A stretch of DNA of 64,000 nucleotides, taken from the NCBI GenBank assembly GCA_002269645.1, contig NIVC01003661.1, forward strand, positions 20,440 through 84,439, in the 5' to 3' direction. Below the pieces are notes generated by a model. That model was given only the letters and a program-made list of their open reading frames with translations. It searched no databases and was not told the DNA's origin. The translations under genes were made by a program, and so were the position numbers. This document shows positions 5,558 to 62,372 of the stretch, piece after piece. Position 1 is the stretch's first letter, and every line of letters begins with the position of its first letter. The stretch comes from Macrostomum lignano. Lineage: Eukaryota.

Positions 5558-19828
<14,271 letters not shown>

Positions 19829-19928
19829 CGCTAGAGGTGCCTTTTATGGTCCGCGAGGAATTTCTGAAATTAAAAGAAACTTACGGCGATAGGTTTAACA
19901 AGAATCTTCTAAAATCGTCAACTTTCTG

Positions 19929-20430
19929 TAGTCACGTGACTTCAAGCGTCAGATCGAATGCACGACCTTGATCAATTCACGTGACTTCAAGCGTCCGATT
20001 GAATACATGACCTTGAGAAATTCACGTGACTTTAAGCGTCAGATTGAATACACGACCTTGAGAAATTCATGTGATTATACGCTCGTAAGCGTCAGATTGA
20101 ATGCATGACCTTGAGAAATTCATGTGACTTCAAGCGTCAGATTGAATGTACATGACCTTGAGAAATTCACGTGACTTCAAGCGTCCGATTGAATAAATGA
20201 CCTTGAGAAATTCACGTGACTTCAAGCATCAGATTGAATACATGACCTTGAGAAATTCACGTGACTTCAAGCTCCTGGCTTAACTGGCTTTCAAATTACG
20301 AACGCAAGACAGCGTCACAAATAAATTTTAACACTCAGTTTTCAAGACAAAAAAGCTGGGTTAAATATATGAGCTTTGATAAATAAAAATCATGAGCTTC
20401 CTTATGACTTTAAGTAAAGCACGTGACTTC
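19929..20430. promoter_or_regulatory. Putative hexosaminidase promoter: 45-bp tandem repeat carrying CLEAR/E-box (TCACGTGAC) and TCAAGGTCA motifs
   Basis: Perfect GTCACGTGAC at 19931-19940, about 100 bp upstream of the ATG at 19828. TTCACGTGAC at 19976, 20021, 20166, 20211 and 20256; GCACGTGAC at 20419. TGACCTTGA at 20008, 20106, 20153, 20198 and 20243. Function is inferred. Confidence 0.6.
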
Positions 20431-20779: not shown

Positions 20780-22290
20780 GAATTTCCCCTCCTAAGAGTC
20801 GAATCCAAAGGAATCTTTCTTAAGAATCTCATGAGAATACAAAGCCAAAGTATCATTTCTAAGAATCTCATCAAGGGAAATCTCTCTAGTTTAGAATCTC
20901 ACCCAGGGGAATCCCTTCACTTGAGAAGCTCACCTAGGGGAATCTATCGAACTGGAGAATCTCACCCAGGGGAATCTCTTCACCTTGAGAATCTCACCCA
21001 GGTGAACCTCTTCATCTTGGGAATCTCACCTAGGGGAATCTATCGAACTGGAGAATCTCACCCAGGGGAATCTCTTCACCTTGAAAATCTCACCCAGGGG
21101 AATCTATCGACCTTGAGAATCTCACCTAGGGGAATCTATCGACCTTGAGAATCTCACCCAGGGGAATCCCTTCACCTTGAGAATCTCACCAGGGGATTCT
21201 CTTCACATTAAGAATCTCACCTAGGGGAATCTATCAACCTGGAGAATCTCACCCAGAGGAATCTCTTCACCTTGAGAATCTCACCCAGGTGAACCTCTTC
21301 ATCTTGGGAATCTCACCTAGGGGAATCTATCGAACTGGAGAATCTCACCCAGGGGAATCTCTTCACCTTGAAAATCTCACCCAGGGGAATCTATCGACCT
21401 TGAGAATCTCACCCAGGGGAATCCCTTCACCTTGAGAATCTCACCAGGGGATTCTCTTCACATTAAGAATCTCACCTAGGGGAATCTATCAACCTGGAGA
21501 ATCTCACCCAGAGGAATCTCTTCACCTTGAGAATCTCACCCAGGGGAACCTCTTCATCTTGGGAATCTCACCTAGGGGAATCTATCGAACTGGAGAATCT
21601 CACCCAGGGGAATCTCTTCACCTTGAGAATCTCATCCAGGGGAATCCCTTGACCTTAAGAATCTCAACTAGGGAAATATATCAAACTGGAGAATCTCACC
21701 CAGGGGAATCTCTTCACCTTGAAAATCTTACCCAGGGGAATCTCTTCACCTTGAGAATCTCACCCAGGGGAACCTCTTCATCTTGGGAATCTCACCTAGG
21801 GGAATCTATCGAACTGGAGAATCTCACCCAGGGGAATCTCTTCACCTTGAGAATCTCACTCAGGGGAATCTATCGACCTTGAGAATCTCACCCAGGGGAA
21901 TCCCTTCACTTTGAGAATCTCACCCAGGGGATTCTCTTCACCTTAAGAATCTCAGCTAGGGGAATCTATCAACCTGGAGAATCTCACCCAGAGGAATCTC
22001 TTCACCTTGAGAATCTCACCTAGGGGAATCTATCGACCTGGAGAATCTCACCCAGGGGATCAATCTCTTTACCTTGGGAATCTCACCTAGGTAAATCCCT
22101 TCACCTTGAGAATCTCACCCAGGGAAATCCTTCACCTTGAGAATCTCACTCAGGGGAATCTATTGACCTTGAGAATATCACCCAGGGAAATCCCTTCACC
22201 TTGAGAATCTCACTCAGGGGAATCTATCAACCTAGAGAATCTCACGAATCTCACTCAGGGGAATCTATTGACCTTGAGAATCTCTTACCT
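20780..22290. repeat. Degenerate minisatellite of about 32 bp with multi-unit higher-order structure
   Basis: GAGAATCTCACCCAGGGGAATCTCTTCACCTT-type units. Confidence 0.9.
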
Positions 22291-22620
22291 CAATCTTACC
22301 TGCTGTGCCTTCGGTGAAGGAAGTCCCTTATTCACTTGCGCAACATTGCCAGCTTTGTGCATGCGGCGTGCTTCATACTCTCAATTTTGCTCAATAGCTC
22401 TGCTACTCTTTATTACGAAAAATACAAAGATGCAGGGGAGAATTGCCATAGACAATGCTGGCAGCGAAATGATAGCATAAAGTGCATGCAACAATCACCC
22501 AGGGGAGTCTCTCTACCTTGAATTGAGGCACCGTGGCAATATTGGCACAGCAGTTGCGGTGTGCGCTAAATAACGCTCGTAATTTCACTCGGACTCTATC
22601 GAGAGCATGTGCTAGCTGGC

Positions 22621-27715: not shown

Positions 27716-30700
27716 TCAGCCAATCAGGAACTGGCTAGAGCAGTCGGCTCGTCTCAGCCAATCAGGAACGGGCTGGTCCAGACGGGCGATGGCTCTATAG
27801 ATGGGCTTCTTCCAGGCCGGCTGCTGATCTCGGCTGACCGACAGAGCTTGGTAAAACTCGACCAGAGCTGCTTGCACGACGGCCAGAAAGTGGGATGGAA
27901 CCTGTGAGGGAAGATAGAGGGTGTGAGAGGACTGTGAATGATCCCTACAGATGATTGTGAAGAGTGAGTGAGAGAGGGTGTGAATGATCCCTACAGATGA
28001 CTGTGAAGAGTGAGTGAGAGAGGGTGTGAATGATCCCTACAGATGACTGTGAAGAGTGAGTGAGAGAGGGTGTGAATGATCCCTACAGATGACTGTGAAG
28101 AGTGAGTGAGAGAGGGTGTGAATGATCCCTACAGATGACTGTGAAGAGTGAGTGAGAGAGGGTGTGAATGATCCCTACAGATGACTGTGAAGAGTGAGTG
28201 AGAGAGGGTGTGAATGATCCCTACAGATGACTGTGAAGAGTGAGTGAGAGAGGGTGTGAATGATCCCTACAGATGACTGTGAAGAGTGAGTATGAAAGAG
28301 AGTGTGAATGATTCCTATGGATGATTGTAAACAGTGAATGAGAGAGACTGTGAATGATCCCTACAGATGACTGTGAACAGTGAGTGAGAGAGAGACTGTG
28401 AATGATCCCTACAGATGACTGTGAACAGTGAGTGAGAGAGAGACTGTGAATGATCCCTACAGATGACTGTGAACAGTGAGTGAGAGAGAGACTGTGAATG
28501 ATCCCTACAGATGATTGTGAACAGAGAGTGAGAGTGAAGGACACCTATAGAGAACATCGCATGCAGTGACCCATGCTAACAGGTATTTAATACCCCAGTA
28601 ACCTGATTGCTCTCACCTGCAGTCGGTCAGACTTGTTGAAGTGGGTGCACAGAGCCAGCACGAGTTCATCGCCGCTGCTCACCTGAAGGCCCTCGCCGGT
28701 GGCCAGGCGCTCCCTGGCGAGCTTCTCCACTTGGATGTAGAAAAACTCGCTGAATGAAAAAATGAGTGGAAAATTGCAATAACCCGTATATTGCAGACAC
28801 CAGCGGCAATAAGCATCGAAATTTATTGGCCCTAAATTATTGCAGTTCAGAATTTCATTGAAACTTATATGCACATGATTTAGTTAGTTAAATAATTACT
28901 AATGATAATAATTGCAGGAGTGAGGCAACTCTGCCCAATCCGCTCACTCCTGAGCAAAATTCAAGCGCGGCAATTCTGTACGCAGTCAGTCAGTCAGTCA
29001 GTCAGTCAGTCAGTCAGTCAGTCAGTCAGTCAGTCAGTCAGTCAGTCAGTCAGTCAGTCAGTCATTCAGTCAGTCAGTCAGTCAGTCAGTCAGTCAGTCA
29101 GTCAGTCAGTCAGTCAGTCAGTCAGTCAGTCAGTCAGTCAGTCAGTCAGTCAGTCAGTCAGTCAGTCAGTCAGTCATTCAGTCAGTCAGTCAGTCAGTCA
29201 GTCAGTCAGTCAGTCAGTCAGTCAGTCAGTCAGTCAGTCAGTCAGTCAGTCAGTCAGTCAGTCAGTCAGTCAGTCAGTCAGTCAGTCAGTCAGTCAGTCA
29301 GTCAGTCAGTCAGTCAGTCAGTCAGTCAGTCAGTCAGTCAGTCAGTCAGTCAGTCAGTCAGTCAGTCAGTCAGTCAGTCAGTCAGTCAGTCAGTCAGTCA
29401 GTCAGTCAGTCAGTCAGTCAGTCAGTCAGTCAGTCAGTCAGTCAGTCAGTCAGTCAGTCAGTCAGTCAGTCAGTCAGTCAGTCAGTCAGTCAGTCAGTCA
29501 GTCAGTCAGTCAGTCAGTCAGTCAGTCAGTCAGTCAGTCAGTCAGTCAGTCAGTCAGTCAGTCAGTCAGTCAGTCAGTCAGTCAGTCAGTCAGTCAGTCA
29601 GTCAGTCAGTCAGTCAGTCAGTCAGTCAGTCAGTCAGTCAGTCAGTCAGTCAGTCAGTCAGTCAGTCAGTCAGTCAGTCAGTCAGTCAGTCAGTCAGTCA
29701 GTCAGTCAGTCAGTCAGTCAGTCAGTCATAGACAATGTCCCTTGACTCACCGAAAGTTCGAGAACCACTTCACCACCTGGGCGGTGTTGTTCTTGTCAAA
29801 CCGAATGTCCGGGAAGCAGGACTTCAGGGTGGCTGAGCTGGGGTAGCGGCTGTAGAAGAAGATCAGCTTGGCTTTGCGCAGGTGGCCGGCGGACAGCGGG
29901 TGGCCGACCGGGTCTCCGCGGCCGCACTGCGAAGGCTAAGGGCAAATTGGGTTGGGGTGAATGCGGGATGCTGGGGGATCAGAGTGGGTGCTGGAAGAGT
30001 GCAAGGAATCTGTGGGAAGCCATTTATTTGCTTTACAGAAGCAATTCACTAATCGTAAATCATAAATAAAAAATCTCAAACTGGAAGACAAACGGTTCCC
30101 GTGTTTGCCCAGCAATTACCGGCCGCCTCACCATCTCTGACTCACCGCAGGCTGACATGGCGTGGAGGCCCTGCTGCCGCCATCCGGGCATCCGCCCTGG
30201 CCATCCGCCCCGACCGGCGCGGGGTTCGCCTCTGGTTGGAGGGGCCGGCGGCCTCGACCAGTGTCGGCCTCGACCAGTGCCGCGACCTGCGGCATTGTTG
30301 TTTCCGGTTTGTATTGAGATGATTTGGTACTGTAAGGGAATCCGCCCCTCCTTCTGGGGAATCCGCCCCTCCTGCTGGGGAATCCACCCCTCCTGCTGGG
30401 AAATCCGCCCCTCCTGCTGGGGAATCCGCCCCTCCTGCTGGGGAATCCGCCCCTCCTGCTGGGGAATCCGCCCCTCCTGCTGGGGAATCCGCCCCTCCTG
30501 CTGGGGAATCTGCCCCTCCTGCTGGGGAATCCGCCCCTCCTGCTGGGGAATCCGCCCCTCCTGCTGGGGAATCCGCCCCTCTCCATTGACGAATCCGCCC
30601 TCTCCAAAAGCAATCCGCCCTCTCCAAAAGCAATCCGCCCTCTCCAAAAGCAATCCGCTCTCTCCAAAAGCAATCCGCCCGCTCCAAAAGCAATCCGCTC

Positions 30701-31187: not shown

Positions 31188-31477
31188 GGCTGTGGGATGC
31201 AGCTGTGCCTGGTTGGTGGGTAAAGACTGGACAGCTCTGGGGTCTGTCTGGCAGGCCACCCCTGTTAGCCTTCTTATTGTCTGGCTCGGGTTGAGGTGGT
31301 GGGGTGGGCTGCCCCCCTGCTTTCCCATTGGCTGGGAAGGGTTGTGGGACTGTGGAATCGAGGGGGGCACGTGCCCAGATCTGACCTCGATATGTCACCC
31401 CCTGCCCTGAGACCTGTCACTCTCAAGGCACAGATGGCATCACTGAGCATAAACCAGACAGCGTCCTGAAGATAGCA

Positions 31478-31770
31478 TCAAATCTCATTTAACTCTATTA
31501 AATCTCATCCAAGCTCCATCGAATCTCATTTAAGCGCTATCAAATCTCATTTAAGCGCTATCAAATCTCATTTAAGCTTTATCAAATCTCATTCAAGCTC
31601 TATCAAATCTAATTTAAGCTTTATCAAATCTCATTCAAGCTCTATCAAATCTCATTTAAGCGCTATCAAATCTAATTTAAGCTTTATCAAATCTCATTCA
31701 AGCTCTATCAAATCTCATTTAAGCGCTATCAAATCTCATTCAAACTCCATCAAATCTCATTCAAGCTCTC
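31478..31770. repeat. 21-bp minisatellite, same family as 37844-39270
   Basis: AAATCTCATTCAAGCTCTATC-type units. Confidence 0.9.
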
Positions 31771-36342: not shown

Positions 36343-36556
36343 CTTAAAGCGCAGAAAAAATTCACAAATTTATCAATCAAGCTACTCTACTGAGAGTAGA
36401 AATATGCGAAAATCATTGACGAAATGTATCAGGCGGAGAAAAAAGACGCACAACAAAAAGAATACCAATTATTAGAGGAGAAAAATATGCGAACAGCTGG
36501 ACAGAAAATTAGTCACGTGATGCTCCTCAATCTGGCTTTTGATAGGTCCATCGCTC

Positions 36557-39500
36557 TCAGGACTCCGCTGTGAGCTCTGATTCGTGCGGCAGGCCCTGGG
36601 CAAGATAAACAGGTGCTGAATGAATGCGCGAGCCAAATTAACTGTGCGATGATGATGCAACCGTGACAGAAAATAAAAGTGCAAATGCTGGTCGGCTCCA
36701 GTGCAGGATGCACCTCTAATACGCAGGAACTCAAGTATCTGTATTCTAACTGCCTAATCGGGTAATTTGTGAGCTCGGTATTCGACAGTAAAACAAGCTT
36801 TTAATTCTTGTAAAACGAACCAAAAACTTTCCAAGTGACGTGCTGTGAAAAATAAGAAAACAGCTAAGGGATGCTACTTTAAGTAGGCGATTCTCGGGCA
36901 TTCAACGCTTTATCTGGCTGAAATTACAAATATTTATGATATGCAATGATGTAGATAATGAGGATGGATCGAAGTGCTGAGAGGAGATGCATAAACCAAA
37001 AAAACTTGACTCACCAGGGTGCTTTCCAGATTCACGAGCCTGGATGAGGCACTTGACAGGTCCTTCTCGCGCGACATTAGCTCGGCTTTGAGAGTTCGAA
37101 TCTCGTAGTCTTTTCGCTTGATTTTCTCTCGGATCGCCCGCTTCTTGGCCTCCTCCTGGGTGACCGCAGTGTGAGCAGGGATTGGTCACTCACTCACTCA
37201 CTCACTCACTCACTCACTCACTCACTCACTCACTCACTCACTCACTCACTCACTCACTCACTCACTCACTCACTCACTCACTCACTCACTCACTCACTCA
37301 CTCACTCACTCACTCACTCACTCACTCACTCACTCACTCACTCACTCACTCACTCACTCACTCACTCACTCACTCACTCACTCACTCACTCACTCACTCA
37401 CTCACTCACTCACTCACTCACTCACTCACTCACTCACTCACTCACTCACTCACTCACTCACTCACTCACTCACTCAGCCAGCCAAAACTCACCTTGGCAT
37501 GCACATCCTCAGGCGGGCAGTGGGCGCCCCCGCTGGCGCCGGCCCCCAGGCTGCCCCTGGCCGTGGTGGCTGCCAGGTTCTGCCCGGAGTGCAGCGCCTT
37601 CTTCTGCTTGATGGCCGTGTTGAGTCGCTTCTCCTGGTTGAGCACGTCCTTTGTCCGGCTGAGGCTCTCGCGCAGCAGGTCGACCTCTTCGCCGCGAGAT
37701 CGCAGGTCCTGGGCCAGGCTGTCCACCTGGTTGAATGGGTAATATGTTAATTTCGGTACATATCGGTAGTGCATACCCTACCGATGCATACACAATGCAT
37801 ACACTAGACTAATATAGTTAATTTAGTGCTAAAACTTTAAAAATCAAATCTCATCCAAGCTCCATCAAATCTCATCCAAGCTCCATCAAATCTCATCCAA
37901 GCTCCATCAAATCTCATCCAAGCTCCAATAAAAATTCATTCAAGCTCCATCAAATCTCATTCAAGCTCCATTAAATCTCATTCAAGCTCCATCAAATCTC
38001 ATTCAAGCTCCATCATATCTCATTCAAGCTCTATAAAATCCCATTCAAGATCTATCTCAAATCTCATTCAAGCTCCATCAAATTTCATCCAAGCTCCATC
38101 AAATCTCATTCAAGCTCCATTAAATCTCATTCAAGCTCTATAAAATCCCATTCAAGATCTATCTCAAATCTCATTCAAGCTCCATCAAATCTCATCCAAG
38201 CTCCATCAAATCTCATCCAAGCTTCATCAAATCTCATTCAAGCTCTATAAAATCCCATTCAAGATCTATCTCAAATCTCATTCAAGCTCCATCAAATCTC
38301 ATCCAAGCTCCATCAAATCTCATCCAAGCTCCATCAAATCTCATCCAAGCTCCATCAAATCTCATCCAAGCTTCATCAAATCTCATTCAAGCTCTATAAA
38401 ATCCCATTCAAGATCTATCTCAAATCTCATTCAAGCTCCATCAAATCTCATCCAAGCTCCATCAAATCTCATCCAAGCTCCATCAAATCTCATCCAAGCT
38501 CCATCAAACCTCATCCAAGCTCCATCAAATCTCATTCAAGCTTCATCAAATCTCATTCAAGCTCTATAAAATCCCATTCAAGATCTATCTCAAATCTCAT
38601 TCAAGCTCCATCAAATCTCATCCAAGCTCCATCAAATCTCATCCAAGCTCCATCAAATCTCATCCAAGCTCCATCAAATCTCATCCAAGCTTCATCAAAT
38701 CTCATTCAAGCTCTATAAAATCCCATTCAAGATCTATCTCAAATCTCATTCAAGCTCCATCAAATCTCATCCAAGCTCCATCAAATCTCATCCAAGCTCC
38801 ATCAAATCTCATCCAAGCTCCATCAAACCTCATCCAAGCTCTATCAAATCTCATTCAAGCTCTATAAAATCCCATTCAAGATCTATCTCAAATCTCATTC
38901 AAGCTCCATCAAATCTCATCCAAGCTCTATAAAATCCCATTCAAGATCTATCTCAAATCTCATTCAAGCTCCATCAAATCTCATCCAAGCTCCATCAAAT
39001 CTCATCCAAGCTCCATCAAATCTCATTCAAGCTCCATCAAATCTCATCCAAGCTCCATCAAATCTCATCCAAGCTCCATCAAATCTCATTCAAGCTCCAT
39101 CAAATCTCATCCAAGCTCCATCAAATCTCATCCAAGCTCCATCAAATCTCATCCAAGCTCCATCAAATCTCATCCAAGCTCCATCAAATCTCATCCAAGC
39201 TCCATCAAATCTCATTCAAGCTCTATAAAATCCCATTCAAGATCTATCTCAAATCTCATTTATCTATCAAATTCTCTTACTCTTTCTCCACCTCACTCTA
39301 GCGGAACGGGTGTTAACACCTTCCTTCTGTATTCGGATGCCCGGAGCCCCCTGCAACGCCCCCCTCACTCCCTTACCCACCCCATTCCCTCACTCACCCC
39401 ATTCCCTCACCCACCCCACTCCATCAACCACCTCACTTCCTCATCAAATACATCGGTAGTGAGACTTGGCATCAGCAAGGGCTTTGCCGCATGGATTAAG

Positions 39501-42500
39501 TAAACTGAAGCCTGGAACTGCACCTGGATGGTAACTACACTACCAGTGCCGAAGGTTCGCTAAATCTTCTTTTCTCCACCTGCTTTCCGCAGGTTGACGA
39601 ACCGGAGTACGTGGTCGATGACCACAGGCCTTGTGATCACAAGCTTTTCCAGCAGTGCGCCACCCCCCAGCTACTCCAGCTGGCAGCAAATTCTTTTAAA
39701 CCGTATAAATCGTCTGGCCCTGACAATATCGCCCCCTGTATCCTGCAGGAGGCGCTAAAGCTGCAAAACTTTGCTGATTCTTTCTCTAAATTGCTTGTTG
39801 ACTGTTATACCACAGGTTACATTCCCACAATCTGGAGAATGTCCAGAGTCGTGTTCATCCCGAAACCTGCTAAGGGTGACTACACCAACGTGAAATCCTT
39901 CCGGCCCATCAGCCTCACTTCCTTTTGTGTTAAGCTGATGGAGAGGCTCATCCTGTGGAGGCTTCGAGAGTGCGACCTGCGCTCCGACCCTGTCAGTAAG
40001 TACCAGTACGCCTTCCAGCCTGGGAGGACGACTGAGCATGCTCTCCACGCCATTACCTCCAAAATTGAGAGTGCCATCCTTAGCAAACAACTCGCTTGCG
40101 GGTTGTTCGTTGACTTCGAAGGAGCATTTGACAATGTCCTCTTCCGCTCCTTCAGAAATTCTCTTTCCCGCAGGAATGTTAGACACAGCATTGTTCGCTG
40201 GATTTATTTTATGATCCGCAAAAGGTTTGTGACATCCACACTTATGGGCGTTACCCTCACCCGGGCGGTGATGAAAGGCGGCCCGCAAGGTGGCGTGCTA
40301 ACTCCACTTCTCTGGAATCTCGTCATGGACGAACTTCTAACCGCTGACATTCCCAGCAGTATCACCAGGGCGGGCTACGCCGATGACGTTGCCGCGGTCG
40401 TCAGCGGACCCGACCCCGCCACTCTGCGCAACCTGATGCAGCAATTCGCCGACAAGGCGGCCGACTGGGCTACACAGCATGGCCTAAAAATCAGCGTCAC
40501 TAAGACTGTCGCTGTCGTTTTCACCAAGCGCCGTAAGTGGGAGATGAAAAACCTCACTGTCTATGGCAGAAACATCCCCTTCAAGAAGGAGGTCAAATAC
40601 CTCGGTGTGACGCTAACGCATGACCTGCGCTGGACGAAGCACCTTGATAACGTCATCGGTCGGGCAAAACGCTGCTTTGCCCAGCTGCGCAGAGCCATCG
40701 GGCCGACTTGGGGCCTCTCGCCTAGAACGGTCCGTTGGATTTATACCGGCATCATCCGGCCCAGTATCACATACGCGAGTCTCATCTGGACTAGCGTGCT
40801 GGAGCAGAAGGCCGCCCGTCAGCGGCTGTACCAGCTTCAGGGCAGCATTTGCCGTGCCATCACAGGTGCGTACCCGTCCACCCCTTACGAGGGGCTGAAC
40901 ACTATCCTTAACCTACCTCCGCTTCACCTATTTATTAGGGCGGAGGCTATGAAGTCTGCCTCCCGGCTTATCAGAGATAAAACGTTAAATAACGCGCCCT
41001 CTGGCTTTATGCCAATGAAAACATTAATCCCGCATATGGACTTTGTCCGCCGCGACCTTAACAACATCCACATGGACCTGGGCAATGTGGATAGTCGACC
41101 TCCCGCCCTCAACATCAGGAGGGGCTTCAAGACCGCCATCCCTGGCCGAGACAACATTCCGCTGGATGTCGGTGTGAACCGGCGCAGCCAGGGCATTCAC
41201 TGCTTCACCGACGGCTCGCTGTTCAACGGCCGCGCTGGAGCGGGTATTGCCATTTTCCACGAGGGTAAGATGCTTCTCCAGGAAAGTCTGCACCTCGGTG
41301 AGAACACCTCAGTTTTCCAAGCTGAAATTTGCGCCATTGAGCAGTGTGCCCAGCAACTGTTTCAGGCGAACATTAATAATTTTGACATTAATTTCTACAC
41401 TGATAGCCAAGCTGCTATTAAGGCCTTAACCACTGAGAATATCTCCGCTGCTACAGTATCTCAATGCCACCGCAGTGTGCAATCTCTCTCAGTCCTTAAC
41501 AGGATTAGAATTATCTGGACACCTGGTCACAGCAACATCCTGGGCAACGAGCTCGCGGACTCTCTCGCCAAGGAGGGCAGCAACCCAGACGGCAACCACC
41601 GTCTGATGAGGCTACCCACCCCCAGGTCGCAAGTCACCCGCCATATCAACAGGTGGCTCCATCAGCAGCACCAGCTCCACTGGAACAGCTGCACCGAGTA
41701 CAGGCAGAGCCGCTCTGCCATGCCTAACCTGAACAGGAAAGTCTCTGATTATCTGATTTCGCTTAACAGAACCGACCTCAGGGAGATGTGCATGGTCCTA
41801 ACCGGCCACGGATTCTTCCAGAGACATATATCGTTGCAAACCGGTTGCCCTCCCACCTGTCCCTTCTGTGGCATAGGAGAGGAGACCGCGGAGCATCACG
41901 TCACCTTCTGCCCTTACTTCAACAAGGCGCGGCACAAATACCTCGGCCACCCCAGCGGATGGACGAGCTGACCACCGCGGACAATATCCGAGACCTCCGC
42001 GCCTTCGTCCGGGACTCCGGCCGGATGAGGGTCGCCGATGCCTCCACTGCGGACCTGCCGACTACTGGCGGGGACTGGGCGCACCCCCAAGGCTAATCCT
42101 TGTGCTCTTTTACCTTGGGGTTGCGATAGGGGCCTCGCGGCCTATTCGCGGCGCCTGCGCCCCCCGTCAGTAGTAAGTAAGTAAGTAAACTGAAGCCAAC
42201 CAATCACTAGGCTAATATAATGAGTTTAGTGCTGAAGCTCAGAAAACTCCCTGACTCGCCGGTGCATTTTCGCTGACAAACCGGCTTTCCAGCGAGATTC
42301 GCTCACCTGATGGCTCCTCTTGCCCGCCAGCTCCTCGGCCTGCCGCAGCTTGGCCAGGTCCCTCTCGTATCCCTGCAGGAGGTCCTCCTTGCGGCCCAGG
42401 CGCTCCTTGAACAGCCGCACCCGCTGGGTCAGCAGGCTGGCCGCCTCCTCCCGCTCCCGGGCCAGGCGGTCGCGCTCGTCACGGGGCAGGTGGGCCATCG

Positions 42501-45500
42501 AGCGGAGGCCCTGGGCGATGGCGAGGAGTGAACGGAATGAGTGAACTAGGCAGTGACGGAATGAGTGAACTAGGCAGTGACATAATGGATGAACTAGGCA
42601 GTGATAGAATGAGTGAACTAGGCAGTGACAGAATGAGTGAACTAGGCAGTGACGGAGTGAGTGAACTAGGCAGTGACAGAATGAGTGAACTAGGCAGTGA
42701 TGGAATGAGTGAACTAGGCAGTGACGGAATGAGTGAACTAGGCAGTGATGGAATGAGTGAACTAGGCAGTGATGGAATGAGTGAACTAGGCAGTGACGGA
42801 ATGAGTGAACTAGGCAGTGATAGAATGAGTGAACTAGGCAGTGACGGAATGAGTGAACTAGGCAGTGATAGAATGAGTGAACTAGGCAGTGACGGAATGA
42901 GTGAACTAGGCAGTGACGGAATGAGTGAACTAGGCAGTGAAGGAATGAGTGAACTAGGCAGTGATGGAATAAGTGAACTAGGCAGTGACGGAATGAGTGA
43001 ACTAGGCAGTGACGGAATGGGTGAACTAGGCAGTGATGGAATGAGTGAACTAGGCAGTGACAGAATGAGTGAGCTAGTCAGTGAAGGAATGAGTGAACTA
43101 GGCAGTGACGGAATGAGTGAACTAGGCAGTGACGGAATGGGTGAACTAGGCAGTGATGGAATGAGTGAACTAGGCAGTGACAGAATGAGTGAGCTAGTCA
43201 GTGAAGGAATGAGTGAACTAGGCAGTGATGGAATGGGTGAAATGTCTGAAAGCCTCTCACCTGCACAGACTCGAGCTCGAGCCCGCTGGCCAGGCCCCGC
43301 AGCAGGCTGAGGTAGGTGTGCTCAGACAGTTCCAGGCAGTCGCGAGTCTCTTTGTGCGCCGCCCGTTCGGCCTCCAAATCGGCCGCCGAGGAAGCTATTC
43401 GAGCCACGCCGGAGGCTCCCAGCTGCCTGGCGTCACCGGCGGAGGCGCCCCCGATGGCCGGGCGAGTCTCCGCCATGGCCTGCTTGGCTCGGAGCTCGGC
43501 CAGCTCCTTTTTGAGCAGCGTCACCTGCTGCTGCTGGGCTGCTTGGTCTTGCGAGGCAGCCGCTGAAGAGAAATTGAGAAATTGTCCAATCGGGGTGTAC
43601 ATTGTTAAAAGTGCACATTAAATTGACTTGAGATATACTGTATCAAGGAGTTTCGCGTGACAAATTTTGCTATCAATTAAACAAAGTACACGTCACGTTG
43701 TCAGCGTCGCGTACATTGCCCAGCTAAACCCCCGCACGCCAGAGGTCGGGCAATAAAATGGGGTAGAGATCCGACTGAGACAGGGCAGATAGTGTGCAAA
43801 TGTCCTGGGCCAAATCCTCCCCCACGCGAGAGGTTGGGCAATAAAATGGGGTAGAGATCCGACTGAGGCAAGGCAGATAGTGTGCAAATGTCCTGGGCCA
43901 AATTCTCCCCCACGCGAGAGGTTGGGCAGTAAAATGGGGTAGAGATCCGACTGAGGCAAGGCAGATAGTGTGTATGGTCCTGGGCCAAATCCTCCCCCAC
44001 GCGAGAGGTTGGGCAGTAAATGGGGTAGAGATCCGACTGAGGCAGGGCAGATAGTGTGTATGGTCCTGGGCCAAATCCTCCCCCACGCGAGAGGTTGGGC
44101 AGTAAAATGGGGTAGAGATCCGACTGAGGCAAGGCAGATAGTGTGTATGGTCCTGGGCCAAATCCTCCCCACGCGAGAGGTTGGGCAGTAAATGGGGTAG
44201 AGATCCGACTGAGGCAGGGCAGATAGTGTGAATTGTCTTTGGTCAAATCCTCCCCTCAATCAAGAGGTTGGGCAATAAAATGAGGTAGAGATGCGACTGA
44301 GGCAGGGCAGATAGTGTGAATTGTCTTTGGTCAAATCCTCCCCTCAATCAAGAGGTTGGGCAATAAAATGGGGTAGAGATGCGACTGAGACCAAGGCAGG
44401 TAGTGTGCATTGTCCTGGGCCAAATCCTCCCTCAGTCGAGAGGTTGGGCAATGAAATTGGGTAGGGAAGTAGGTTCTGATTCTGAGAAAAAAAATTGTGA
44501 ACTTCTAATAGAAGTGCACTAACAGAGGAAATACTGAGTAGGCTAGAGAGGAATAAGGAAACTGAACTCGCTCACCAGACGGCCGAGTCCGCTCCAGCTC
44601 TTTCAGCCGCTTTCGCAGCTCGCTGAGCGCCTCCTTCTGGTGAGCGATGACCTCGGCGTGGCGCTCGCCGCGGCACTGGTGACCCAGCGAGGACATCTCG
44701 GCAGCGATTCGCTCCTCCTCACAGGTGCGCGCCGCAGCCTCATCGGCCCGGCAACGCTCGGCTTCTAGACGGGCCTCGAGGTCCTTGGAGCCGACCTCGG
44801 TGCGATCCAGGGCCGACTGCATGCGGCCTAGGGCGGACCGGTGCTTCTCCTGCTGGGCTCGAGCTTCGGCCAGCTGAGCAGCCTGGGAGCGGATAGAGTG
44901 GATTGCTAGCCTAGCCAAATAGAGTGGATTGCTAGCCTAGCCAATAGAGTGGACTGCTAGCCTAGCCAAATAGAGTGGATTGCTAGCCTAGCCAATAGAG
45001 TGGATTGCTAGCCTAGCCAATAGAGTGGATTGCTAGCCTAGCCAATAGAGTGGATTGCTAGCCTAGCCAATAGAGTGGATTGCTAGCCTAGCCAATAGAG
45101 TGGATTGCTAGCCTAGCCAATAGAGTGGATTGCTAGCCTAGCCAATAGAGTGGATTGCTAGCCTAGCCAATAGAGTGGATTGCTAGCCTAGTTAATAGAG
45201 TGGATTGCTAGCCTGGCCAATAGAGTGGATTGCTAGCCTAGCCAATAGAGTGGATTGCTAGCCTAGTTAATAGAGTGGATTGCTAGCCTGGCCAATAGAG
45301 TGGATTGCTAGCCTAGCCAATAGAGTGGATTGCTAGCCTAGCCAATAGAGTGGATTGCTAGCCTGGCCAATAGAGTGGATTGCTAGCCTAGCCAAATAGA
45401 GTGGATTGCTAGCCTAGTTAATAGAGTGGATTGCTAGCCTGGCCAATAGAGTGGATTGCTAGCCTAGCCAATAGAGTGGATTGCTAGCCTAGCCAATAGA

Positions 45501-56716: not shown

Positions 56717-59700
56717 TACATGTGGAGTCTGGAATTACAACTGATTGGATAACTCAAATTTGGTACGAAAAACAGTGGCCATCCTATCTTCCCGTTGGGA
56801 AGGCATAAAGTATAAGATAATAGCCATTGTCGGCTGATTTTCCATGCAAGAATGGCATTCCTGCACTCTTTTGCGTGCAGGAATGGATGTCTATGGTAAA
56901 ATCTCACTGAAAAAGCATTAGGCGCAGAAATGCATTCCTGCACGGTTTTGTGCATTCCTGCACGATGAATCATCCGACAATGGAATTCCTTCACGTTCAC
57001 TCGTGCGTGAAGGACATCGTGCACTCGTGCGCTAGCGCGCACTCGTGCAGATGTCATTCCCGCACTCGTGACCGTGCAGGAATATATCATTCTTATTTGA
57101 TCCAGCGTGCAAGAATGCTTTGGAAGTCGCCATATGCGTGCAGAAATGCAAGTGTCTATGGCAAAAGCACCTTGAATTTACATGTGCACTCCGTGCAAGA
57201 ATGTCAATCGTGCAAGAATGTAATGCGCAATGTTTCTATATTTAGCATAACAGCCATAGACTACAAGCATAATCTTCTTTCCATCGTGCAAGAATGTTCA
57301 GACTAGCTCGCGCATATTTTGTCTATGGTTCAAGTCTAACTCCACACCCCCAGCTTCACCCTTGTCTACTTTAGCCACACATGTTGGATCAAATAAGAAT
57401 GGGAATCAAGCACTTTGACTTGTGCGTCTATGGTAAAAACCCTCGTGCGCTACGCGCACTCGTGTTTCAGCCATTGACGCACTCGTCAGCGTGCTAGATT
57501 CCTCCATTATAACACGACGAAGTGTGCATTTAACAACATAGTCTATGGCGAAACCGTGGTAATCATTATGTATTTCAAAATATAATCAGCGTGCATTTAA
57601 CGCAGGCATTAATGGTAGTCTGAAACCATAGACTTAATCGCATTATCATATAGACTAGCGTTTTCGGTTGATCATTATGTAACGCCATTAAGCCACGCCA
57701 TTAAGTAACGCTGCAGTGTCTTCGTGCCATAGATATTGGCTCGGCAGTGAGCATGGACAAGGGGGCGCAGCTCCCTTGCGGGGGTGTGGGGGCAGAGCCC
57801 CCACTAATTGGACCATAGACAATTTTTTAGAATACAGTTCTCTAAAAGAAAAGCTCGACCATGAAGTCTGTTAGGAAGTTAAGAACTAGAAGCAAGAAGC
57901 GAGAGAAATCGAATTAAAAATGTCTCTTATCAACTGGAAAAACCTACCGGTCGACAGTTTAGATGGCGTCTCGTCTACTGAACTAGATTTTCTGAGTGAA
58001 CTGAGCGCCGTGAACCACAGTTCCGATGAAATTCTTGGAGATTTTATCGACTACCTGACTAAAATCGAGACGGCTGATGAGGCCGCTGCGGTTTCTAGTG
58101 TCGAGCTTCCAGAACTATCTGATTTACCCAGTGCGATGGATGTTGCCGAACTGGAATCACTGCCGAGCACTACACGAGAACACATGTTTCTGTATGGCAA
58201 AATGTTCGTGGAGTTTTTGAAGAAACATGGTGCTGTGGATGTAAGCGTGATCAGTGACAGTCGCTTGGCCGAATTTTTAAGGTTCTTTTACTTCTGTCTA
58301 AAAAAATCTGACGGCAGTTGCTATTCGCCAGCTACGTTGGTCTGCATTCGTGCTGGAGTGCAGAGGTACTTGACTCTCGTGCTGAAGCGTCGAACAAATA
58401 TTATTTCCAGTGACGAGTTCGCCACTGCCAACCGGATGCTGCGAGTAAAGGTGCGGCATTTTCATGCTGATGGAGGCACTGTCAATCAGCACGAGCCAAT
58501 AGAAAAAGGTGATTTACAGAAAATGCGTGCTTATTTTGACCGTTCTACAGCAGAACGGTTGCAAGATGAAGTACTATTTACGCTGCTGTATGTCCTGGGC
58601 GAGAGAGGTCAAGAACACCTGTCAAGTCTAAAGCAAGTTGGCACGCTCCAAGAAGAAGTCGACGCTGATGGGAATCCATATCTTGCGTTGCCGCCGTTAA
58701 AGACAAAAAACCAGACTAGCGATCCAACAAAATGCAAGGGAAATCAGCGCAAACAGAGTCGGATCTACGGCGCTCAGCGGGAGTTGATCCTGCATTATCA
58801 GAGTTTGTTACCGCAGAATTCGTCCTCGTTCTTTCCGCGCCCTCTGACTAACAATTCGGGAGGACAAATTCGATTCTCTGCTACGCAAGTGCGCGGTGTC
58901 AATTGGTTGGCTGCATTCATGAAGCACGTTAGTAGTGTGTGCAACCTCTCCAAGCAGTACACGAATCACTGCATACGCGTCACGCGTATTGCGGATCTTT
59001 TCGACAAAGGAATGCCTATGGGGGAGATAATGGCGGTAACGGGACAACGATCGGAGTCCACTGTTCGACGTTATCTCGCACGCAAGCGTGACAGAACCCT
59101 CAGGAAGGTTGCTACCGCTGTTAGTGACAATTTGGCCGCACCAACCGATGCGACTACGAGTGCAACCACTAGTGCAACAGTCATGCAGCAAGCTCAAGTT
59201 GACCTGCGAAGTGTGCAACAGCCGATGTTTGCCAACTGCCTCTTCGATGGGTGCACGTTCAAATTCTAACAAAGAATATATAGCTCGTACTTATAAGTCT
59301 TAACTGTCGAAAATCAAATACTTTGGTATTCGTTTGCTTTGCTATATCCTCGATCTGTTTCCTGTTAAAGTTCTTGTTGCTTAAATTAATAAAAACAGTG
59401 AATTTCTCGCTCATAATCTATGGCAATTTATCGTGACTTAACAGCTTCATTAAAAAATGCATTAAAAAACGATAGTCTATATGATAATGCATTATAGGCA
59501 CGCTAAAAACGGGAGCAGATATTAAGTACACAGAGATTGAAAGCAAGCATGCGGTCCTAAAATATAGTCTGCTCACGCGTAGTTCGATCTGATTCACTTC
59601 AAAAATGCAGTTGTGCAGTGTACCGTAGATGTTGTAGATCACTGTAGGCCTGCCATTGCCAGTAGTGTTGGTCAGCGTCGTTGCGGTGGTGATATCAGTT

Positions 59701-60869: not shown

Positions 60870-61705
60870 TCTGGCAGAATCGTCGACGGGTCTCGTTGCG
60901 AGACGAGGATTTCGTATTCGCTATCATGCCGTACTGGACCGCGTCACCAGCGGCGGAGGTACTGGGTGGGGTCTTTAAATAATTCTCTCCGACTAAGAAA
61001 CCGCTTTACTTGCTGGGCAGGATGAAGGGCAGGATTGAGTAAGCAATGACCGATAGCACATGACCGCACATGACCCTTCCCGCCATCAATGCATCCAGTC
61101 TGCAACAGCATGCCATGACCGCACATGACCCTTCCCGCCATCAATGCTTCCAGTCTGCAACAGCATGCCATGACCGCACATGACCCTTCCCGCCATCAAT
61201 GCTTCCAGTCTGCAACAGCATGCCATGACCGCACATGACCCTTCCCGCCATCAATGCTTCCAGTCTGCAACAGCATGCCATGACTGCACATGACCCTTCC
61301 CGCCATCAATGCTTCCAGTCTGCAACAGCAGCCAGCAGGTGGCTGTGAGTCCGTTCGACCCGCCCAGATCGCTCGTGAGCCATCCGGGATTCGAATCCGG
61401 ACGGTACTACTCGATCAACATGACCTGCTCCTGGATCCTGACGGTGCCGGAATCCTTTTTCATTGAGGTCTGGTTCGAATTCCTAGAATTGGAGACCCAG
61501 CTCGACAAGGTGCAGCTGCTCGATGCGAACTCGGTGCTCATGGCCGAGCTGTCGGACTACTACCCGAACTGCAGCGTCCTGCCGGTGTTCTCGACGTCCC
61601 GGAACAGCTCCGGCACCCGCATGTGCATCATCTTCAGCACTGACGGCTCGGTGCTGATGCGCGGGTTCCGCATTCGCTACCGAGCGGTGTCATCTGATAG
61701 AAATA
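60870..61705 (+). CDS. CUB-domain protein fragment (intact exon 61319-61705; degenerate upstream exon ending at 60958)
   Basis: The phase 1-1 exon encodes C...SHPGF...YSINMTCSWIL...IEVWFEFLELE...DKVQL...IFSTDGSVLMRGFRIRYRAV. An upstream fragment RGFRIRYHAV ends in a phase-1 donor at 60958, but its 5' half is frameshifted. A CUB-like CLDYLTL...LCG fragment lies at about 62480-62535. May be a pseudogene. Confidence 0.75.
61056..61330 (+). repeat. 55-bp minisatellite containing the CUB exon splice acceptor, 5 copies
   Basis: CCAG|TCTGCAACAGCA with AG ending at 61098, 61153, 61208, 61263 and 61318. Confidence 0.93.
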
Positions 61706-62372
61706 GTAAGTCTTTATGACCTGATGGAAACAGTAAGTCTTTGTGACCTGATGGAAACAGTAAGTCTTTATGACCTGATGGAAACAGTAAGTCTTTGTGA
61801 CCTGATGGAAACAGTAAGTCTTTATGACCTGATGGAAACAGTAAGTCTTTGTGACCTGATGGAAACAGTAAGTCTTTATGACCTGATGGAAACAGTAAGT
61901 CTTTGTGACCTGATGGAAACAGTAAGTCTTTATGACCTGATGGAAACAGTAAGTCTTTGTGACCTGATGGAAACAGTAAGTCTTTATGACCTGATGGAAA
62001 CAGTAAGTCTTTGTGACCTGATGGAAACAGTAAGTCTTTATGACCTGATGGAAACAGTAAGTCTTTGTGACCTGATGGAAACAGTAAGTCTTTATGACCT
62101 GATGGAAACAGTAAGTCTTTGTGACCTGATGGAAACAGTAAGTCTTTATGACCTGATGGAAACAGTAAGTCTTTGTGACCTGATGGAAACAGTAAGTCTT
62201 TATGACCTGATGGAAACAGTAAGTCTTTGTGACCTGATGGAAACAGTAAGTCTTTGTGACCTGATGGAAACAGTAAGTCTTTATGACCTGATGGAAACAG
62301 TAAGTCTTTGTGACCTGATAGAAACAGTAAGTCTTTATGACCTGATGGAAACAGTAAGTCTTTATGACCTGA
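61697..62372 (+). repeat. 27-bp minisatellite containing the CUB exon splice donor, 25 copies
   Basis: Unit GATGGAAACA|GTAAGTCTTT(A/G)TGACCT; the real junction GATAGAAATA|GTAAGT is at 61705/61706. A/G variants mostly alternate. Confidence 0.95.

What the first reader, a model, noticed from the sequence alone, without database searches (positions are those of the whole stretch)
19929..20430. Minisatellite-amplified CLEAR (TFEB/MITF) elements in the promoter of a lysosomal hydrolase
Seen: a perfect GTCACGTGAC about 100 bp upstream of the hexosaminidase ATG, then 45-bp tandem units. The array carries five more TCACGTGAC and five TCAAGGTCA-type sites; further copies lie at 20419 and in exon 1 (19555). 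Known: GTCACGTGAC is the CLEAR element bound by MiT/TFE factors (TFEB, HLH-30) near the TSS of lysosomal genes, including vertebrate HEXA. TCAAGGTCA is the ERR/NR5A monomer site. Inference: the motif fits the gene function, so chance is less likely than for other arrays. A VNTR that multiplies a composite TFEB + nuclear receptor module could act as a copy-number dial on lysosomal gene expression.
Basis: partly seen in the sequence, partly recalled or inferred. Interest (0 to 1): 0.8.

Follow-up and report, generated by a model that had tools for sequence, protein, structure and literature searches.

The report
E-box minisatellite upstream of flatworm hexosaminidase
A 45-bp tandem repeat just upstream of a flatworm (Macrostomum lignano) lysosomal-type hexosaminidase gene carries eight binding-site-like motifs for the TFEB/MITF family; it is real and unlikely to be chance, but it is one of about 50 such arrays in this stretch and its regulatory role is untested.

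Summary
A 45-bp minisatellite (7 full units plus a 19-nt eighth, 19929-20272) lies 103-445 bp upstream of the ATG (19828, minus strand) of a GH20 beta-hexosaminidase. It carries six TCACGTGA and two TCATGTGA sites, and five TCAAGGTCA sites. The window comes from Macrostomum lignano. It is 43% tandem repeat, with 49 arrays, and about a quarter of the minisatellites carry some textbook factor consensus, so an amplified motif is not special in itself. A 45-nt unit holding TCACGTGA next to the only lysosomal hydrolase here is still improbable by chance (about 5e-4). The best reading is an ordinary slippage-born minisatellite that multiplied a genuine promoter-proximal E-box of CLEAR type. The nuclear-receptor half of the claimed module looks incidental: it is shared with the neighbouring 32-bp array and varies by CpG/TpG changes. 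The copy at 20419 is a decayed orphan unit, not an independent site. The transcription start is unknown. A consensus splice or trans-splice acceptor lies 35 nt before the ATG, so the array could be promoter, outron or 5' intron. Copy-number polymorphism, MiT/TFE binding and any dial effect are untested. This is a new member of a known kind, the site-bearing promoter VNTR.

The parts
19929..20272 (.). 45-bp minisatellite with 7 full units and a 19-nt eighth unit. Each unit starts with a MiT/TFE-type E-box: 6 x TCACGTGA and 2 x TCATGTGA.
   Evidence: TRF, unit alignment, motif search.
19930..19941 (.). Gene-proximal E-box. It is the only copy with the full 10-bp CLEAR consensus GTCACGTGAC (12-bp palindrome AGTCACGTGACT). 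It lies 103 bp 5' of the ATG and 67 bp 5' of the acceptor AG.
   Evidence: Sequence.
20404..20430 (.). Degenerate orphan copy of the unit junction (ATGACTTTAAGTAAAGCACGTGACTTC). It accounts for the 'further copy at 20419'.
   Evidence: blastn of a unit dimer against the window: 81% over 27 nt, E=0.03.
20862..22284 (.). Neighbouring 32-bp minisatellite (43 copies). It shares the core GAAT..GACCTTGAGAAnnTCAC with the 45-bp unit and has no E-box.
   Evidence: TRF.
19864..19879 (-). Polypyrimidine tract plus acceptor TTTCTTTTAATTTCAG| (AG at 19865-19864), 35 nt 5' of the ATG. It fits the M. lignano trans-splice acceptor motif [T/C]TNCAG.
   Evidence: motif from PMC8629364. Use of this site is inferred, not shown.
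19543..19828 (-). Putative coding exon 1 of the hexosaminidase. It encodes a signal-peptide-like [19 protein letters not shown] followed by a Q/N/A/K/P-rich stretch from a 21-bp coding repeat (19617-19724). It ends at the donor G|GTAAGG in phase 1. It contains TTCACGTGACC at 19554-19564.
   Evidence: frame compatibility with the acceptor at 18512 worked out. No database protein contains this peptide.
18030..18512 (-). Exon 2. It encodes the start of the GH20 N-terminal domain (..[18 protein letters not shown]..). The acceptor is CCAG| and the donor is |GTGAGC.
6163..17004 (-). Remaining hexosaminidase coding segments, given as homology limits rather than splice-exact ends: about 16824-16690, 10557-10440, 10380-10246, 8935-8526 (1-nt frame break in a C-run near 8812), 7081-6983 and 6504-6163. 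The introns are filled with tandem arrays.
   Evidence: tblastn; Pfam.
27716..28883 (-). Last two coding exons of the upstream same-strand neighbour, a prospero/PROX homologue. The stop is at 27718-27716, with AATAAA about 70 and 185 nt downstream.
   Evidence: Pfam HPD E=4.7e-16 and 4.9e-7.

Best explanation
This is an ordinary minisatellite. It arose by replication slippage or unequal exchange in a genome that makes such arrays everywhere. It happened to multiply a 45-bp segment of the 5' flank of a lysosomal-type beta-hexosaminidase gene of Macrostomum lignano, and that segment contained a genuine promoter-proximal E-box of CLEAR type.

The result is a homotypic cluster of eight MiT/TFE-compatible sites (6 TCACGTGA, 2 TCATGTGA) spaced about 45 bp apart, 100-445 bp upstream of the start codon. 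If the flatworm MiT/TFE orthologue binds these sites as its relatives do, the cluster would work like a natural version of the synthetic multi-CLEAR reporters. It would couple hexosaminidase transcription to nutrient or lysosomal stress signals, with more sites giving higher occupancy.

Shown: the array, the motifs, the gene identity, the local repeat background, and the low chance probability.
Inferred: that exon 1 is real, that the array is in the promoter or outron rather than a long 5' intron, that MiT/TFE is the factor, and that the sites are used.

The TCAAGGTCA sites are most likely a by-product of the repeat family. A copy-number 'dial' is possible but has no evidence.
For: 1. Array anatomy and motif counts.
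2. Gene identity: GH20 catalytic and N-terminal domains, animal HEXB-type best hits, and the M. lignano hexosaminidase entry A0A1I8J7F9, which is 97% identical overall with exon matches of 77-100%.
3. Start of the gene: the exon at 19828 is the only signal-peptide-like start with a phase-compatible GTAAGG donor in the 9 kb upstream of exon 2.
4. Neighbouring gene: the upstream prospero gene ends at 27716 with poly(A) signals close by. There are 3.1 kb of non-repeat DNA between the genes, above the 1-kb repeat-adjusted operon threshold, so the hexosaminidase should have its own promoter (PMC8629364).
5. Chance: the probability of TCACGTGA in a 45-nt unit is about 4.6e-4, and the expected number of such arrays in the window is 0.009.
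6. Literature:
   - TCACGTGA is the CLEAR-box. TCATGTGA is bound by MITF with only moderately lower affinity. The 5' T disfavours MYC (PMC10539308).
   - CLEAR elements are typically clustered, mostly within 200 bp of the TSS (PMC11262230).
   - Human HEXA, HEXB and GLB1 promoters carry CLEAR elements and respond to TFEB (PMC6471159).
   - A MITF-like gene exists in planarians (PMC8698962).
   - In M. lignano, 2 kb or less upstream of the TSS suffices for faithful reporters (PMC5730564).
7. Neutral origin:
   - The window is 43% tandem repeat with 49 arrays.
   - The array has a partial terminal unit and internal indels.
   - A decayed orphan unit lies 130 bp away, and the core is shared with the adjacent 32-bp array.
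Against: - No transcript data are available, so the TSS is unknown. The consensus acceptor 35 nt 5' of the ATG means the mRNA may be trans-spliced or may have an upstream 5' exon.
- A public gene model splices an exon ending at 22300 to exon 2 and skips exon 1.
- No database protein contains the exon-1 peptide.
- Motif positions are not better conserved than the rest of the unit (2/56 against 13/194, p=0.53; the test has low power).
- Variants are CpG/TpG changes that both destroy E-boxes and create NR sites, as expected under neutrality.
- USF1 binds the same sites as MITF (PMC10539308), so the factor is not identified.
- About 10 of 34 minisatellites here carry 3 or more copies of some textbook consensus from an ad hoc panel.
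- The presence of MiT/TFE in M. lignano was not checked here.
- The hexosaminidase exon has a 1-nt frame break near 8812. This is probably an assembly indel in a C-run, but a pseudogene copy is not excluded.
Confidence: 0.5

Rival explanations
1. Neutral coincidence. The array is junk like its roughly 50 neighbours, the E-box in its unit arose by chance, and it has no effect on the gene.
For: - The window is 43% tandem repeat with 49 arrays.
- Amplified ETS, AP-1, NF-Y and TEAD consensus sites occur in other arrays, including arrays inside hexosaminidase introns.
- There is no excess conservation of the motif.
- CACGTG is at expectation in non-repeat DNA.
- The TCAC half of the E-box is shared with the 32-bp repeat family.
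Against: - The chance that this particular unit holds TCACGTGA is about 5e-4. Only about 0.009 such arrays are expected in the window.
- The motif matches the best-known regulator of exactly this gene class (PMC6471159).
- Six intact high-affinity sites within 350 bp would be hard for a resident bHLH-ZIP factor to ignore.
Confidence: 0.22
2. The sites are real promoter E-boxes, but they are read by another bHLH-ZIP factor (USF, or another CACGTG binder such as MAX-network, MLX/Mondo or CLOCK-type factors). The link to lysosomal regulation would then be illusory.
For: [quoted passage not shown]
- CACGTGAC-type E-boxes are common general promoter elements in animals (own knowledge).
Against: - The T and A flanks (TCACGTGA) and tolerance of TCATGTGA fit MiT/TFE best and disfavour MYC.
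- The gene class fits the CLEAR network.
Confidence: 0.15
3. The array is not in the promoter. Transcription starts far upstream, for example at or beyond the exon 22403-22300. The 32-bp and 45-bp arrays would then lie in a 2.4-kb 5' intron, so at best the array is an intronic enhancer.
For: - A consensus acceptor lies 35 nt 5' of the ATG.
- The candidate exon has a canonical acceptor and a CAG|GTAAGA donor at 22300.
- That exon is used in public gene model P0121.
Against: - P0121 is a chimera of the prospero C-terminal exon with hexosaminidase exon 2. Prospero has its own stop and poly(A) signals.
- The 22403-22300 segment has stops and frame breaks in this window, so its status as an exon rests on an automatic prediction.
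- The acceptor fits SL trans-splicing equally well, and 30% of genes are trans-spliced (PMC8629364). With trans-splicing the promoter would be nearby.
Confidence: 0.2
4. A selected composite TFEB + ERR/NR5A module whose VNTR copy number acts as an evolvable dial on lysosomal gene expression.
For: - Five exact TCAAGGTCA sites sit at a fixed distance from the E-boxes.
- Promoter VNTRs are known to modulate nearby genes (PMC8024321).
Against: - The NR-like core is inherited from the repeat family shared with the 32-bp array.
- The completing base varies as CpG/TpG.
- There are no data on polymorphism.
- There is no conservation signal.
Confidence: 0.08

Closest known systems
CLEAR elements of the TFEB/TFE3/MITF (HLH-30, Mitf) lysosomal-autophagy network
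   Same: - The same sequence: GTCACGTGAC once and TCACGTGA six times.
- Sites clustered close to the gene start.
- The target is a hexosaminidase, as with human HEXA and HEXB (PMC9562866, PMC11262230, PMC6471159).
   Different: - The cluster here is made by a perfect-period 45-bp tandem duplication, not by independently placed sites.
- Binding, TSS distance and the presence of the factor in this species are untested.
Synthetic multimerised CLEAR reporters (4XCLEAR-luciferase)
   Same: Head-to-tail copies of a CLEAR site placed upstream of a gene.
   Different: - This one is natural, with longer spacers (45 bp) and 6-8 sites, two of them weakened to TCATGTGA.
- No activity data exist.
Promoter minisatellites (VNTRs) that carry factor sites and act as expression modifiers, such as human eVNTRs and yeast promoter repeats
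   Same: Unit size, position near a gene start and site-bearing units. The proposed mechanism is that copy number changes factor occupancy (PMC8024321; Vinces et al. 2009, own knowledge).
   Different: Polymorphism and any expression effect are not shown. The genomic background is extreme (43% tandem repeat locally, 15% genome-wide, PMC5730564), which makes a neutral origin the default.
ERR/NR5A (SF-1/FTZ-F1) extended half-site TCAAGGTCA
   Same: An exact 9-mer in 5 of 7 units.
   Different: The core comes from the local repeat family, and the last base is a CpG/TpG variant. Nothing suggests it is more than a look-alike.

Membership tests
CLEAR element / CLEAR-network gene | Sequence GTCACGTGAC, or the core TCACGTGA with its T and A flanks | tested here: met
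   One full decamer at 19931-19940, six TCACGTGA and two TCATGTGA.
CLEAR element / CLEAR-network gene | Location close to the TSS, mostly within 200 bp, often in multiple copies | tested here: inconclusive
   Multiple copies are present. They lie 103-445 bp from the ATG and 67 bp or more from a candidate (trans-)splice acceptor. The TSS itself cannot be read from sequence.
CLEAR element / CLEAR-network gene | Target gene encodes a lysosomal or autophagy protein | tested here: met
   GH20 HEXA/B-type hexosaminidase by Pfam and homology, with a signal-peptide-like N-terminus. Lysosomal localisation itself is inferred.
CLEAR element / CLEAR-network gene | Bound by, and responsive to, a MiT/TFE factor present in the organism | not testable with these tools
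   A planarian MITF-like gene is reported (PMC8698962). The M. lignano orthologue was not looked up, and there are no binding or expression data.
Minisatellite / VNTR | Head-to-tail copies of a 10-100 bp unit | tested here: met
   45-bp period, 7.4 copies, 86% matches.
Minisatellite / VNTR | Copy number varies between alleles or individuals | not testable with these tools
   No second copy of the locus could be fetched.
ERR/NR5A monomer response element | TCAAGGTCA present and maintained as a site in its own right | tested here: not met
   The 9-mer is present in 5 of 7 units. However, the core is shared with the adjacent 32-bp array, and the final base alternates A/G through CpG/TpG change.
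GH20 beta-hexosaminidase | Glyco_hydro_20 catalytic domain with the D-E pair, plus the N-terminal 20b2 domain | tested here: met
   PF00728 E=9e-77 covering 1-347 of 348, and PF14845. HLGMDE retains the D-E pair. There is one frame break in a C-run near 8812.
SL trans-spliced gene of M. lignano | [quoted passage not shown] | tested here: inconclusive
   The motif TTTCAG is present at 19869-19864 (PMC8629364). Read evidence is not available.

The most novel reading that the evidence does not exclude
A naturally occurring n x CLEAR tandem enhancer. The array would be length-polymorphic among M. lignano lines and homeologous chromosomes, would be bound by the flatworm TFEB/MITF orthologue, and would set hexosaminidase inducibility in proportion to unit number. 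That would be a minisatellite-driven route by which a repeat-rich genome tunes its lysosomal and digestive programme.
Probability: 0.1. Interest if true: 0.6.

Novelty: new member of a known kind. Interest (0 to 1): 0.35.

Why it matters
If the sites are used, this would be a clean natural example of homotypic site multiplication by a minisatellite in a well-understood regulatory network (MiT/TFE and lysosomal hydrolases). It would also be evidence that CLEAR logic extends to flatworms.

M. lignano has transgenesis, so reporters with defined unit numbers are feasible. The organism's very high minisatellite load makes it a good place to ask how often such arrays capture and amplify real cis-elements.

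As it stands, this is one locus with no expression, binding or polymorphism data.

Tried and rejected
- Fetching a second copy of the locus (homeologue, other assembly or transcript). The two M. lignano proteins found, P0001 and P0121, are UniRef-only and have no contig on record.
- A protein search with exons 1+2. It returned only P0121 and no protein containing the exon-1 peptide.
- A scan of metagenome contigs for the unit. It found no match.
- Rfam and tRNA scans of the window. They found nothing.
- A within-array conservation test of motif against non-motif positions. It gave no signal and has low power.
- Treating P0121 as evidence for a far-upstream start. Rejected, because its N-terminal part is the C-terminus of a prospero homologue that has its own stop and poly(A) signals.
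- An operon with prospero. Unlikely, because 3.1 kb of non-repeat DNA separates the genes, against a 1-kb threshold (PMC8629364).
- The TATA-like CATAAAAG at 16-23 nt 5' of the ATG. Rejected, because it is too close to the ATG to serve this ORF.
- The sites at 36513 and 47467 as further CLEAR candidates. 47467 lies in a coding ORF and 36513 is isolated. They share only a 12-mer.
- Checking for MiT/TFE in M. lignano by protein search. I ran no further search on this, because vertebrate hits would swamp the list of 120 rows.

Full report
**What is there.** TRF reports a 45-bp array at 19932-20272 with 7.4 copies, 86% matches and 6% indels. Splitting on the E-box gives seven full units (45, 45, 45, 53, 47, 45, 45 nt) and a truncated 19-nt eighth unit. 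The consensus is AATTCACGTGACTTCAAGCGTCAGATTGAATACATGACCTTGAGA.

- Six units carry TCACGTGA, at 19932, 19977, 20022, 20167, 20212 and 20257. Units 4 and 5 carry TCATGTGA.
- Only the gene-proximal copy has the full decamer GTCACGTGAC (19931-19940), inside the 12-bp palindrome AGTCACGTGACT.
- Five units carry TCAAGGTCA on the minus strand. Units 1 and 3 have TCAAGGTCG.
- Most of the single-base differences between units are CpG/TpG alternations: CACGTG/CATGTG, CACGACC/CATGACC and AGCGTC/AGCATC. Such changes destroy two E-boxes and complete the nuclear-receptor-like sites.

**Source and background.** The coding segments downstream match the Macrostomum lignano beta-N-acetylhexosaminidase entry A0A1I8J7F9 (P0001). 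The best BLASTP local alignment is 97% identical, and the exon-by-exon matches range from 77 to 100%. The window is therefore from this flatworm.

The window is extraordinarily repeat-rich. There are 49 merged tandem arrays covering 43% of the 64 kb. The published genome-wide figure for simple plus tandem repeats is 15% (PMC5730564). I scanned the 34 minisatellites with an ad hoc panel of 30 textbook factor motifs. About ten carry three or more copies of some consensus, for example:
- ETS CCGGAAGT, 10 copies, at 6537-6936.
- AP-1 TGASTCA, about one per unit, at 14212-14949.
- NF-Y CCAAT, 5 copies, at 2466-2876.

The first two of these lie inside hexosaminidase introns. A consensus amplified in an array is therefore commonplace here and says nothing on its own.

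**The gene and its 5' end.** A conceptual protein assembled from the minus-strand segments gives Glyco_hydro_20 (E=9e-77, 1-347 of 348) and Glycohydro_20b2. The best hits outside Macrostomum are animal HEXB-type enzymes.

- Exon 2 (18512-18030) encodes ..[18 protein letters not shown].. and has no start codon.
- The ATG at 19828 opens [19 protein letters not shown], a textbook signal peptide by eye. It is followed by a Q/N/A/K/P-rich stretch encoded by a 21-bp coding repeat.
- That exon ends at the donor G|GTAAGG (exon end 19543, phase 1). This phase is compatible with the CCAG| acceptor at 18512.
- In the 9 kb upstream of exon 2, this is the only ATG with a hydrophobic start and a consensus donor in the right phase.
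- Against it, no protein in the large database contains this peptide.
- Thirty-five nucleotides 5' of the ATG lies TTTCTTTTAATTTCAG| (AG at 19865-19864). This fits the M. lignano trans-splice acceptor motif [T/C]TNCAG. [quoted passage not shown]

The mRNA therefore probably either receives the spliced leader here or has an upstream 5' exon. In neither case can the TSS be read from sequence.

**The far-upstream exon.** The second protein search found only A0A1I8FKC0 (P0121). This is an automatic model that joins segments at 27898-27779 and 22403-22300 to hexosaminidase exon 2.

- The first segment is the C-terminus of a Homeo-prospero domain (Pfam E=4.7e-16). In this window it runs on to its own stop at 27718-27716, with AATAAA signals about 70 and 185 nt further on. 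A preceding prospero exon lies at 28883-28590. P0121 is therefore a chimera of two genes.
- The 22403-22300 segment has a good acceptor and a CAG|GTAAGA donor, but it contains stops and frame breaks in this window. It may be a real 5' UTR exon or a predictor's invention.
- Between the prospero stop and the hexosaminidase ATG there are 7.9 kb, of which 3.1 kb is non-repeat. That exceeds the 1-kb repeat-adjusted threshold used to call operons in this species, so the hexosaminidase should have its own promoter somewhere in this interval.

My estimates, which overlap:
- About 55% that the TSS or trans-splice site puts the array in the promoter or outron.
- About 20-25% that the array lies in a long 5' intron.
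- About 10-15% that exon 1 is not real.

**Are the other copies independent?** A unit dimer aligned to the window shows three things.

- 20404-20430 (ATGACTTTAAGTAAAGCACGTGACTTC) is a decayed copy of the unit junction (81% over 27 nt, E=0.03). The 'further copy at 20419' therefore belongs to the same repeat history.
- The adjacent 32-bp minisatellite (20862-22284, 43 copies) shares the core GAAT..GACCTTGAGAAnnTCAC with the 45-bp unit. The nuclear-receptor-like TGACCTTGA, and the TCAC half of the E-box, therefore come from a local repeat family that otherwise has no E-box.
- 19554-19582 resembles the unit only weakly (72% over 29 nt, E=1.6).

**Chance.**
- The raw count (9 TCACGTGA against 0.66 expected) is inflated by tandem duplication.
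- In non-repeat DNA, CACGTG is at expectation (7 against 6-9), although three of the seven lie in 18505-20420.
- With the window's dinucleotide frequencies, a 45-nt cyclic unit contains TCACGTGA with probability 4.6e-4, and CACGTG with probability 5.4e-3.
- The summed unit length of all the minisatellites here predicts 0.009 arrays with the octamer.
- A rough genome-wide extrapolation, which is my own inference, still gives well under one such array immediately upstream of a lysosomal gene.

Pure coincidence is therefore unlikely. That does not show the array was selected. The simplest account is that a real single E-box in the 5' flank was caught up in a duplication.

**Does the array show constraint?** No. 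There are 2 mismatches in 56 E-box positions against 13 in 194 other positions (Fisher p=0.53). With seven units the test has little power.

**Known biology.**
- GTCACGTGAC is the CLEAR motif (PMC9562866).
- TCACGTGA is the CLEAR-box bound by MITF, TFEB and TFE3. The 5' T favours MITF and excludes MYC. TCATGTGA is bound with only moderately lower affinity. USF1 can bind the same sites (PMC10539308).
- CLEAR elements are typically clustered, mostly within 200 bp of the TSS (PMC11262230).
- Human HEXB, HEXA and GLB1 carry CLEAR elements and rise with TFEB activation (PMC6471159).
- A MITF-like gene is described in planarians (PMC8698962). I did not verify one in M. lignano.
- Promoter VNTRs that modify the expression of nearby genes are well documented (PMC8024321).

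**Verdict.**
- The array is real, and the E-boxes are of the right type and in a plausible place for MiT/TFE control of a lysosomal-type hydrolase.
- The array is best seen as one more product of this genome's minisatellite machinery, one that multiplied a likely genuine site.
- The nuclear-receptor component is probably incidental.
- The TSS, factor identity, polymorphism and dosage effect are all open.

It is a new member of a known kind, the site-bearing promoter minisatellite or homotypic CLEAR cluster, and is of moderate interest.

Noticed in passing
window 1-64000: The window comes from Macrostomum lignano (97% identical to UniProt hexosaminidase A0A1I8J7F9). It is 43% tandem repeat, with 49 merged arrays of period 2-273. 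That is about three times the published genome average of 15%.
   Followed up: yes
window 8805-8815 (minus strand): There is a one-base frame break in a hexosaminidase exon, between EFDTP and DHTHSWG. It falls in a C-run (ACCCCGATCAC where ACCCCCGATCAC would keep the frame). It looks like a homopolymer assembly indel, but a pseudogenised homeologue is not excluded.
   Followed up: partly
window 27716-28883 (minus strand): These are the C-terminal exons of a prospero/PROX homologue (Homeo-prospero domain, E=4.7e-16 and 4.9e-7). UniProt entry A0A1I8FKC0, named 'HMG box domain-containing protein', is a chimeric model that fuses this gene's C-terminus to hexosaminidase exons.
   Followed up: yes
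window 18516-18723 and 20862-22284: The array in intron 1 (GATTCRGGGTGA; reverse complement TCACCCYGAATC) and the 32-bp array upstream of the gene (..GAATCTCACCCAGGGGAATC..) share GAATCTCACCC in inverted orientation. They flank the 2.1-kb segment that holds exon 1 and the 45-bp array. This may be the trace of an old inversion or insertion.
   Followed up: no
window 6537-6936, 14212-14949, 2466-2876, 42527-43241: Other minisatellites carry amplified textbook factor consensus sites: ETS CCGGAAGT (10 copies), AP-1 TGASTCA (about one per 23-bp unit), NF-Y CCAAT (5 copies) and TEAD GGAATG (9 copies). The first two arrays lie in hexosaminidase introns.
   Followed up: partly
window 19617-19724 (minus strand): A 21-bp minisatellite lies inside putative coding exon 1. 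It encodes QANQAKP-type heptad repeats just after the signal peptide, and it produces a spurious Pfam 'Alanine_zipper' hit.
   Followed up: partly
window 31477-31769 and 37843-39259: The same 21-bp unit (ATCAAATCTCATYYAAGCTCY) forms two separate arrays 6 kb apart. Minisatellite families in this genome can therefore be dispersed. The 45-bp unit was not found elsewhere in the window.
   Followed up: no
window 10662-13854: A 3.2-kb G-rich 27-bp array (TGGGGTTGGGGCCTCGCTAGACTGGGG, 117 copies) fills a hexosaminidase intron. It is full of TTGGGG/TGGGGT runs and appears to contain an internal duplication of about 1.5 kb.
   Followed up: no
window 39509-41968 (+): An uninterrupted 820-codon ORF has reverse transcriptase (RVT_1, E=1e-30) and RNase H domains. 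It is a retroelement that may be intact.
   Followed up: partly
window 57890-59266 (+) and 61294-61716 (+): A 459-codon ORF has a weak, sub-threshold tyrosine-recombinase (Phage_integrase) match, possibly Crypton-like or a domesticated relative. An exon encoding a CUB domain (E=4e-8) lies nearby.
   Followed up: no
window 36513 and 47467: The two other TCACGTGA sites share a 12-mer, GTCACGTGATGC, but nothing beyond it. The site at 47467 lies inside a long minus-strand ORF with a coiled-coil-like sequence.
   Followed up: partly
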